This document shows, one piece after another, positions 27,636 through 28,574 of a stretch of 63,865 bases of DNA; position 1 is the first letter of the stretch; every line of letters starts with the position of its first letter. This DNA comes from Glycera tridactyla (lineage: Eukaryota): positions 117,056,136 through 117,120,000 of the forward strand of contig OZ286462.1 in NCBI GenBank assembly GCA_965644265.1. Direction: 5' to 3'. The notes under the pieces were generated by a model. The model had not been told where the DNA came from, did no database searches, and saw nothing but the letters and a program-made list of their open reading frames with translations. The translations under genes were made by a program, and so were the position numbers.

Positions 27636-28574
27636 CTGGAATGGAAAACTCACAATATGAAGGAGGTATCTCGACAAGACTGACTCAACATTTCAATTGG
27701 TGTGACCGAGTCCCACTGTAGTACCAAGTCCTTCATTGTATAAGCAACTGGAATGGAAAACACAATATGAAGCAGGTGTCTCGACAACACTGACTCAACA
27801 TTTCAATTGGTGTGACCGAGTTCCACTGTAGTACCAAGTCCTTCATTGTATATGCAACTGGAATGGAAAACTCACAATATGAAGGAGGTATCTCGACAAC
27901 ACTGACTCAACATTTCAATTGGTGTGACCGAGTCCCACTGTAGTACCAAGTCCTTCATTGTATAAGCAACTGGAATGGAAAACTCACAATATGAAGGAGG
28001 TGTCCCGACAACACTGACTCAACATTTCAATTGGTGTGACCGAGTCCCACTGTAGTACCAAGTCCTTCATTGTATATGCAACTGGAATGGAAAACTCACA
28101 ATATGAAGGAGGTGTCTCGACAACACTGACTCAACATTTCAATTGGTGTGACCGAGTCCCACTGTAGTACCAAGTCCTCTATTGTATAAGCAACTGGAAT
28201 GGAAAACTCACAATATGAAGGAGGTGTCTCGACAACACTGACTCAACATTTCAATTGGTGTGACCGAGTCCCACTGTAGTACCAAGTCCTTCATTGTATA
28301 AGCAACTGGAATGGAAAACTCACAATATGAAGGAGGTGTCTCGACAACACTGACTCAACATTTCAATTGGTGTGACCGAGTCCCACTGTAGTACCAAGTC
28401 CTTCATTGTATAAGCAACTGGAATGGAAAACTCACAATATGAAGGAGGTGTCTCGACAACACTGACTCAACATTTCAATTGGTGTGACCGAGTCCCACTG
28501 TAGTACCAAGTCCTTCATTGTATAAGCAACTGGAATGGAAAACTCACAATATAAAGGAGGTATCTCGACAACAC
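27577..28574 (-). repeat. 9-copy 112-bp tandem array made of the first 59 nt of exon 6a plus the upstream intron and acceptor
   Basis: Unit starts at 27577, 27689, 27799, 27911, 28023, 28135, 28247, 28359 and 28471 (one unit is 110 bp). Copies are nearly identical; copy 1 is the real exon start. Confidence 0.95.

What the first reader, a model, noticed from the sequence alone, without database searches (positions are those of the whole stretch)
27636..28529. The repeat junction creates a new GT donor, making each extra unit a potential in-frame 63-nt mini-exon
Seen in sequence: at each junction the minus strand reads GAAATG-TTGA|GTCAGT. The GAGTCA piece occurs neither in the exon continuation (CACCAA) nor in the original intron (GATGTTTGTG), so it arose at the junction. 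Acceptor to donor is 63 nt, phase 1-1, encoding AYTMKDLVLQWDSVTPIEML (for example 28467-28529), and the spacer to the next acceptor is 49 nt. A second donor-like GTGAGT lies 18 nt before each acceptor and is deleted in one unit. Inference: these are up to eight nascent cassette exons. Splicing one directly to exon 7 would give an in-frame subunit lacking loops F and C, and splicing one to 6a or 6b would duplicate loop B/beta8.
Basis: partly seen in the sequence, partly recalled or inferred. Interest (0 to 1): 0.7.

Follow-up and report, generated by a model that had tools for sequence, protein, structure and literature searches.

The report
Nine-copy splice acceptor repeat, weak donors
A young 112-base repeat inside a worm's nerve-receptor gene copies the start of one exon eight extra times. 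Each copy could on paper be spliced in as a small in-frame exon, but its exit signal is poor and no RNA data could be reached, so it is most likely a silent or mildly disruptive repeat.

Summary
The sequence observation is correct. Window 27577-28574 (minus strand) is a 112-bp tandem array of 8.9 copies at 97% identity. Each unit holds the last 49 nt of the intron plus the first 63 nt of alternative exon 6a of a glycine-receptor/GluCl-like Cys-loop subunit gene.

All eight extra units carry the acceptor, a 63-nt open phase 1-1 segment and the junction TTGA|GTCAGT. The frame arithmetic for joins to 6a, 6b and exon 7 holds.

Use of these units as cassette exons is not supported:
- A donor matrix trained on 45 donors of this gene and its paralogues in the same genome scores the junction donor at -6.3 bits. 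That is below all 45 real donors and no better than about half of the other GT sites in the gene.
- The 49-nt spacer is shorter than the 58-nt gap that separates the 3n-length exons 6a and 6b. It also puts the likely branch point about 27 nt from the donor.
- The unit is unique in the genome, and a related species has one exon 6 and no array.

The likeliest reading is a young intronic minisatellite of pseudo-exons. Earlier notes of this scan on this same stretch of DNA described it as decoy acceptors.

The parts
27577..28574 (-). 112-bp tandem array, 8.9 copies. Each unit is 49 nt of the intron's 3' end plus the first 63 nt of exon 6a.
   Evidence: TRF; units in register; unit found nowhere else in the 2.04-Gb genome.
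28467..28529 (-). Candidate mini-exon 1 (63 nt, phase 1-1, open). Its upstream flank is the original intron.
28355..28417 (-). Candidate mini-exon 2.
28243..28305 (-). Candidate mini-exon 3.
28131..28193 (-). Candidate mini-exon 4 (variant AYTIED...).
28019..28081 (-). Candidate mini-exon 5 (GCA variant, as in the true exon).
27907..27969 (-). Candidate mini-exon 6.
27795..27857 (-). Candidate mini-exon 7 (variant ...QWNSV...).
27685..27747 (-). Candidate mini-exon 8. Its upstream spacer is 47 nt and the GTGAGT is lost through a 2-nt deletion.
28461..28466 (-). First of eight junction hexamers GTCAGT (TTGA|GTCAGT). The other seven are at 28349-28354, 28237-28242, 28125-28130, 28013-28018, 27901-27906, 27789-27794 and 27679-27684.
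   Evidence: PWM score -6.3 bits against real donors of -1.2 to about 9.
28430..28435 (-). One of eight GTGAGT hexamers lying 18 nt before an acceptor. Used as a donor it would give a 94-nt exon and shift the frame. PWM score about 1 bit.
27492..27635 (-). True alternative exon 6a (144 nt, donor CAG|GTAAGC).
   Evidence: alignment to GlyR alpha-3.
27296..27433 (-). Alternative exon 6b (138 nt, donor CGG|GTAAGG), 58 nt after exon 6a.
30184..30266 (-). Exon 5 (Cys-loop), ending in T of a split codon. T+TT gives Phe with 6a or a unit; T+AT gives Tyr with 6b.
21822..22092 (-). Exon 7 (end of loop C, M1 to M3). Its acceptor is in phase 1.

Best explanation
This is a young, lineage-specific intronic minisatellite.

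Origin (inferred). One duplication of about 107-112 bp spanned the 3' splice site of alternative exon 6a. It joined exon position 59-63 back onto the intron 49 nt upstream of the acceptor, at a short ATG(TT) microhomology with 4-6 nt of filler. Slippage or unequal exchange then amplified that unit to eight extra copies.

What each unit is. Each extra unit is a pseudo-exon. Its acceptor is complete and identical to the real one: a branch-point-like TTCAT 22 nt upstream, the tract TTTTCCATTCC, then AG. Its only donors are poor ones: TGA|GTCAGT at +63 and ATT|GTGAGT at +94.

Expected behaviour (inferred, not shown). Exon definition favours the true acceptor at 27635, because only that one is followed at exon distance (144 nt) by a good donor. 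The array is therefore mostly removed with intron 5. When an extra acceptor is used, the commoner outcome should be read-through to the stop 31-33 nt past the junction (...PIEMLSQCCRDTSFIL*), followed by nonsense-mediated decay. In-frame 63-nt inclusion through GTCAGT should be at most splicing noise. It also cannot use the adjacent acceptor, because a 49-nt spacer leaves about 27 nt between donor and branch point.
For: - Array anatomy and 97% identity.
- The unit occurs only here in the genome.
- A related species (two contigs of ENA ERZ26052378, with exon 7 86% identical) has a single exon 6 and no tandem repeat there.
- Tandem arrays are common locally: eight score 150 or more in 64 kb, five of them inside this gene.
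- Donor matrix from 45 donors of this gene and its paralogues: junction donor -6.3 bits; real donors leave-one-out minimum -1.2, median 4.5; 0 of 45 real donors score below it; 529 of 997 other GT sites in the gene score as well or better.
- A at -1 was seen once and C at +3 once in the 45 donors.
- All 25 paralogue introns recovered are 421-4807 nt long.
- Exons 6a and 6b are both 3n in length and only 58 nt apart. This is the arrangement in which exclusivity is attributed to a donor-to-branch-point distance under about 50 nt (PMC5740500) or to introns too short to excise (PMC4165533).
- The read-through stop is visible in the ORF lists.
- Substitutions are no rarer in the exon-derived part (about 4 events in 504 nt) than in the intron-derived part (about 5 events in 392 nt), and 3 of the 4 exon-part changes alter the peptide.
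Against: - No RNA evidence of any kind was obtained, so use of the sites is inferred only from sequence.
- On the intron side alone (+3 to +6) the junction donor is mid-range: 14 of 45 real donors score lower.
- Two paralogues appear to use GTC donors at conserved positions: CAG|GTCTGT in L024 and possibly GAG|GTCAGT in L053 (left out of the matrix because its acceptor reads AAG).
- The training set comes from one gene family. Its exon-side columns are partly fixed by conserved codons, which exaggerates the penalty for A at -1.
- The minimal spliceable intron of this species is unknown.
- Nine identical acceptors with the same downstream exonic sequence could recruit splicing factors efficiently.
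Confidence: 0.6

Rival explanations
1. One reading: the units are nascent cassette exons. The GTCAGT donor is used at an appreciable level, giving in-frame subunits with one or more extra 21-residue loop-B/strand segments, or subunits lacking the end of the ligand-binding domain when a unit is joined to exon 7.
For: - Symmetric phase, open frames in 8 of 8 units, and in-frame joins to 6a, 6b and exon 7.
- The acceptor and first 63 exon bases are identical to a working exon.
- The intron-side donor score is mid-range, and GTC donors are probably used elsewhere in the family.
Against: - The full donor score lies below all 45 real donors and at the background median.
- The 49-nt spacer blocks joining to the adjacent acceptor (PMC5740500).
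- There is no constraint on the encoded peptide.
- The products would duplicate or delete core beta strands of the binding domain (alignment).
- No protein in the searched collections shares words with the unit's peptide. Only proteins of 26-84 residues were candidates in that search, and the species itself seems absent from those collections.
Confidence: 0.12
2. The array acts as a cluster of decoy acceptors or decoy exons. The extra acceptors engage the exon 5 donor unproductively. This either yields stop-carrying extended exon 6a forms that are degraded, or holds intron 5 unspliced. Either way the 6a isoform falls relative to 6b. The effect could be regulatory or simply a mild defect.
For: - Nine identical acceptors.
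- A stop lies 31-33 nt after each junction.
- The last one or two extra acceptors lie 256 and 366 nt from the strong 6a donor, within reach of exon definition.
- Decoy exons that promote intron retention are documented in human genes (PMC6097662, PMC7373989).
Against: - The array is young and absent from the related species, so there is no sign of selection.
- No RNA data.
- Described decoy exons depend on both of their splice sites, and here the donor is poor.
Confidence: 0.18
3. The copy number, or the array itself, is an assembly artefact or a variant private to the sequenced individual, with no species-level meaning.
For: - Near-identical 112-bp units are the kind of sequence assemblers expand or collapse.
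- No reads could be laid.
- Several masked or gap stretches lie nearby, for example 29239-29429.
Against: - The units carry distinct point differences and one 2-nt deletion in a consistent register. That is not what a mis-assembly of identical reads gives.
- A 1-kb array is shorter than a long read.
- The contigs are at chromosome scale.
Confidence: 0.05

Closest known systems
Mutually exclusive tandem-duplicated exons in Cys-loop receptor genes. Examples from my own knowledge: insect RDL exons 3 and 6, nAChR alpha6, GluCl exon 3. Here: exons 6a/6b of this gene, and the 5a/5b pair of the related species.
   Same: Tandem duplication inside the gene. The copies share phase and have 3n lengths. 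The part affected is the binding-site loops.
   Different: The array copies only the first 63 nt of the exon plus its acceptor. It has no inherited donor, eight copies at 97% identity rather than old diverged copies, and no conservation.
Pseudo-exons and exonisation through a newly made donor beside an existing acceptor-like site (deep-intronic disease mutations, Alu exonisation; from my own knowledge).
   Same: A good 3' splice site followed at exon distance by a GT. Inclusion depends wholly on donor strength.
   Different: Here the acceptor is a true copy of a working one. The GT context arose, or was altered, at a duplication junction and was then multiplied eightfold.
Decoy exons that promote intron retention (SF3B1, OGT; PMC6097662, PMC7373989).
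   Same: Exon-like intronic elements that are not productively included yet can engage the flanking splice sites.
   Different: Known decoys are conserved single elements whose own two splice sites are needed. This is a young multi-copy array with weak donors and untested activity.
Steric exclusion between closely spaced splice sites (PMC5740500; PMC4165533).
   Same: The 58-nt 6a-6b gap and the 49-nt unit spacer put the donor and the likely branch point less than 50 nt apart.
   Different: The limit has not been measured in this species. C. elegans excises introns of about 40 nt (PMC4165533).
Intronic minisatellites (VNTRs).
   Same: The unit is about 100 bp, high in identity, specific to one locus and surrounded by other arrays.
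   Different: The unit happens to include a functional splice acceptor and coding sequence.

Membership tests
Cys-loop ligand-gated anion channel subunit (GlyR/GluCl-like): the host gene | Neur_chan_LBD and Neur_chan_memb domains | tested here: met
   PF02931 at E 4e-15 and 1.5e-8 on two exons; PF02932 at E 7e-22 on exon 7. Best solved relatives are glycine receptor alpha subunits, E 3e-32.
Cys-loop ligand-gated anion channel subunit (GlyR/GluCl-like): the host gene | Cys-loop (two Cys 13 residues apart) and the PAR motif before M2 | tested here: met
   Exon 5 reads CPMKLTYFPMDYQIC. Exon 7 reads AVPARITLG.
Cassette (mini-)exon | Functional 3' splice site | tested here: met
   The last 23 nt before the AG match the consensus in eight of the nine acceptors, the true 6a acceptor among them. 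The unit before 27747 lacks 2 nt there. A few point differences lie further upstream.
Cassette (mini-)exon | Functional 5' splice site | tested here: not met
   TGA|GTCAGT scores -6.3 bits on a 45-donor matrix from this genome. That is below 45 of 45 real donors, and 53% of other GT sites in the gene score at least as well. Caveat: the training set comes from a single gene family.
Cassette (mini-)exon | Flanking introns long enough to be excised | tested here: inconclusive
   The spacer to the adjacent acceptor is 49 nt (47 in one unit). Recovered introns are 421 nt or longer. The species' lower limit is unknown. Joins to non-adjacent acceptors (161 nt or more) are not limited.
Cassette (mini-)exon | Open, phase-symmetric reading frame | tested here: met
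   63 nt, phase 1-1, and no stop in 8 of 8 units.
Cassette (mini-)exon | Junction reads or cDNA that include it | not testable with these tools
No protein of this species was found in the protein collections.
Mutually exclusive exon pair (6a/6b) | Adjacent homologous exons of the same phase with intact splice sites | tested here: met
   144 and 138 nt, both phase 1-1, canonical AG and GTAAG sites, LPQF and the loop-C Cys kept in both.
Mutually exclusive exon pair (6a/6b) | Only one of the two present per transcript | not testable with these tools
   No RNA data. The 58-nt spacer fits steric exclusion (PMC5740500).
Decoy exon | Raises retention of its host intron and depends on its own splice sites | not testable with these tools
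   Needs RNA data or a reporter.
Minisatellite | Head-to-tail units of tens to hundreds of bp, specific to one locus | tested here: met

The most novel reading that the evidence does not exclude
The array is a caught-in-the-act case of exon birth or splice control by partial-exon tandem duplication. A duplication junction supplied a donor. The eight units are then used in neurons either as in-frame 21-residue inserts that repeat the loop-B strand of an inhibitory receptor subunit, or as a multi-copy decoy that sets the ratio of the 6a (Phe) and 6b (Tyr) binding-site forms.
Probability: 0.07. Interest if true: 0.6.

Novelty: new member of a known kind. Interest (0 to 1): 0.25.

Why it matters
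If the units were spliced, this would be a rare, datable example of how a new exon or a new layer of splice control starts from a duplication that spans a splice site. It would also sit in a receptor gene whose exon 6 choice already swaps binding-site residues.

As it stands, it mainly matters for annotation. Gene predictors and read aligners will meet nine identical acceptors here and may call false exons or stop-carrying isoforms. The array may also lower the output of the 6a isoform in animals that carry it.

Tried and rejected
- **RNA evidence.** One query of 7.4 kb (21800-29200) to the look-up of sequencing runs listed no RNA run. In hindsight the query was too long for an RNA holder to reach the one-twentieth word threshold.
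- **Transcript-derived proteins.**
  - The unit's 48-residue open frame found nothing.
  - The exhaustive search with exon 7 found no hit above 86% identity.
  - A word search seeded with the relative's exon 7 found a 455-residue cDNA-like protein, P0155. It is from another species, 84% identical in exon 7 and 57% in the binding-domain exon.
  - So nothing from this species is on record.
- **Repeat family or mobile element.** Rejected: the unit matches only this locus.
- **Coding on the plus strand.** Only repeated 43-residue frames without relatives.
- **GTGAGT as the real donor.** Rejected as a source of in-frame product: the exon would be 94 nt and shift the frame, and the exon side ATT is poor.
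- **Joined exon models.** Only single codons across hypothetical joins were translated. Inside one script, windows of at most 38 residues were used to place paralogue splice junctions.

Full report
**What is there**

Tandem Repeats Finder reports a single array at 27577-28574: period 112, 8.9 copies, 97% matches and no indels in the consensus alignment.

On the minus strand each unit consists of the last 49 nt of an intron, ending in TTTTCCATTCCAG, followed by 63 nt that are the start of an exon. The acceptor motif occurs nine times. The first exon bases fall at 28529, 28417, 28305, 28193, 28081, 27969, 27857, 27747 and 27635. Only the last copy continues into the rest of the exon (...GAAATG-CACCAACATG...) and reaches a good donor, CAG|GTAAGC, after 144 nt. 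The other eight end in ...GAAATGTTGA|GTCAGT.

**The host gene**

The gene lies on the minus strand from about 35.5 kb to 17.4 kb of the window.
- Its exons hit Neur_chan_LBD and Neur_chan_memb.
- Exon 7 is closest to solved glycine receptor alpha chains (E 3e-32), ahead of GluCl and GABA-A subunits.
- It has the Cys-loop and the PAR motif of anion-selective subunits.
- Exon 5 (30266-30184) ends with a T that starts a split codon.
- Two homologous alternative exons follow: 6a (27635-27492, 144 nt) and 6b (27433-27296, 138 nt), 58 nt apart.
- With 6a the split codon is TTT (Phe). With 6b it is TAT (Tyr).
- Exon 6a aligns to GlyR alpha-3 residues 161-190 (YTMNDLIFEW...LPQF).

All of them hold.
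- Eight of eight junctions read TTGA|GTCAGT.
- The segment is 63 nt, phase 1-1, and open in all eight units. Six encode AYTMKDLVLQWDSVTPIEML, one has MK to IE and one has D to N.
- The spacer is 49 nt, or 47 nt in the unit before 27747. A 2-nt deletion there removes the GTGAGT that otherwise lies 18 nt before each acceptor.
- Hypothetical joins stay in frame: A+TT (Ile) to another unit or to 6a, A+AT (Asn) to 6b, A+GC (Ser) to exon 7.
- GAGTCA is in neither parent sequence.

One refinement concerns the origin of the donor. Aligned without gaps, the original intron reads GTTTGT (28578-28573) where the junction reads GTCAGT. Two origins therefore fit equally well:
- a join at the ATGTT microhomology, with T replaced by GAGTCA; or
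- four filler bases (TTGA), with the intron's own GT kept and two bases changed.

Either way the event happened once and was then amplified, because all eight junctions are the same.

**Is the junction donor a usable donor?**

- Seven donors came from this gene.
- Twenty-two came from paralogous exons found in the same genome and read off at conserved intron positions.
- Sixteen more came from twenty 5-10 kb paralogue regions. Their junctions were placed by a GT-AG, frame and protein-similarity criterion that does not use donor strength.

In these 45 donors, -1 is G in 37 and A in 1. Position +3 is A or G in 43 and C in 1.

| Site | Score (bits) |
|---|---|
| Junction donor TGA\|GTCAGT | -6.3 |
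| Second site ATT\|GTGAGT | about 1 |
| Real donors, leave-one-out minimum | -1.2 |
| Real donors, leave-one-out median | 4.5 |

None of the 45 real donors scores below the junction donor, and 529 of 997 other GT sites in the 19.8-kb gene span score as well or better. The second site, ATT|GTGAGT, would shift the frame.

Two cautions apply.
- On the intron side alone the junction donor is mid-range: 14 of 45 real donors are lower. Paralogues seem to use CAG|GTCTGT (L024) and perhaps GAG|GTCAGT (L053), so GTC is tolerated when the exon side is consensus.
- The matrix comes from one gene family, so its exon-side columns are partly fixed by conserved codons.

The general rule that donor strength follows complementarity to the U1 5' end is established knowledge (PMC1557818). 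This site pairs at +1, +2, +4, +5 and +6 only, which I read directly from the sequence.

**Spacing**

The likeliest branch point in the 49-nt spacer is the A of TTCAT. It lies 22 nt before the AG and therefore about 27 nt after the junction donor (read from the sequence).

A donor-to-branch-point distance under about 50 nt is the criterion used for steric exclusion in human exon clusters (PMC5740500). In C. elegans, exclusive exons of 3n length rely on introns too short to excise (PMC4165533). In this gene 6a and 6b are both 3n and are 58 nt apart. That suggests, but does not prove, that 58 nt is already too short here.

All 25 paralogue introns recovered are 421-4807 nt long.

A unit could therefore not be spliced to the next acceptor. 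It would have to skip at least one unit, and the last unit could join only 6b or exon 7.

**Origin and age**

- The unit matches nothing else in the 2.04-Gb genome.
- The nearest relative I could reach is represented by two contigs of ENA sample ERZ26052378. Its exon 7 is 86% identical. It has one exon 6 of the Tyr type (AT GCC TAC...) and no tandem repeat around it. Both the 6a/6b pair and the array are therefore absent from that species.
- The named proteins closest to this gene are annelid and nemertean, so the animal is probably an annelid.
- The window holds eight arrays scoring 150 or more, five of them in this gene. An array that overlaps a splice site is therefore not surprising.
- Differences among units are no rarer in the exon-derived part than in the intron-derived part, and three of four alter the peptide. 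The encoded peptide shows no constraint.

**Most likely behaviour (inferred)**

Only the true acceptor is followed by a strong donor at exon distance, so exon definition should favour it, and the array should leave with intron 5. An extra acceptor that is used without the weak donor runs into a stop 31-33 nt past the junction. The last two extra acceptors are 256 and 366 nt from the 6a donor, so stop-carrying long forms of exon 6a are the likelier by-product. In-frame inclusion is possible but should be rare, and its products would repeat or remove core strands of the binding domain.

**What could not be done**

No reads were laid, so the decisive test remains open.

No protein of this species is in the searched collections.

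**Verdict**

The feature is best filed as a young minisatellite of pseudo-exons at the exon 6a acceptor.

Noticed in passing
L006:2774-2854 and 3107-3187; L007:3646-3726 and 3979-4059; window 30184-30266: The related species has two adjacent Cys-loop exons (5a/5b) and one exon 6. This genome has one exon 5 and two exons 6 (6a/6b). The two Lineus longissimus isoforms X1/X2 also differ only in the Cys-loop exon. The exon that is duplicated therefore differs between lineages.
   Followed up: partly
window 17842-18098, 19561-20205, 31647-31959, 36191-36663: Four further tandem arrays lie in introns of the same gene. Periods are 64, 321, 116 and 77, and two of the arrays are 97-99% identical. Local tandem duplication seems frequent here.
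   Followed up: no
L024:140-160; L053 (junction at residue 209 of P0218): Two paralogous receptor genes appear to use GTC donors at conserved intron positions: CAG|GTCTGT and possibly GAG|GTCAGT. The second pairs with an unusual AAG acceptor.
   Followed up: partly
window 27434-27491: The gap between exons 6a and 6b is only 58 nt and both exons are 3n long. Steric exclusion is therefore the likely way the two are kept apart.
   Followed up: partly
window 35753-36091 (minus strand): A 113-residue open frame (…LHWLPVQKDVCRNILLLTYQLLHNMAP…) looks like the tail of a retroelement polymerase sitting in an intron. This is from my own recognition; it was not searched.
   Followed up: no
L016 and L017 (G000:C10:115.23 Mb and 116.64 Mb): Two near-identical paralogue copies lie 1.4 Mb apart on the same chromosome as the window. 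In both, the exon 7 frame runs into a (CTGT)n microsatellite.
   Followed up: no
The genome search own: At least 85 exon-level matches to this receptor family are spread over more than ten chromosomes. They include several intronless-looking open frames of 437-486 residues (C28, C51, C7, C13).
   Followed up: no
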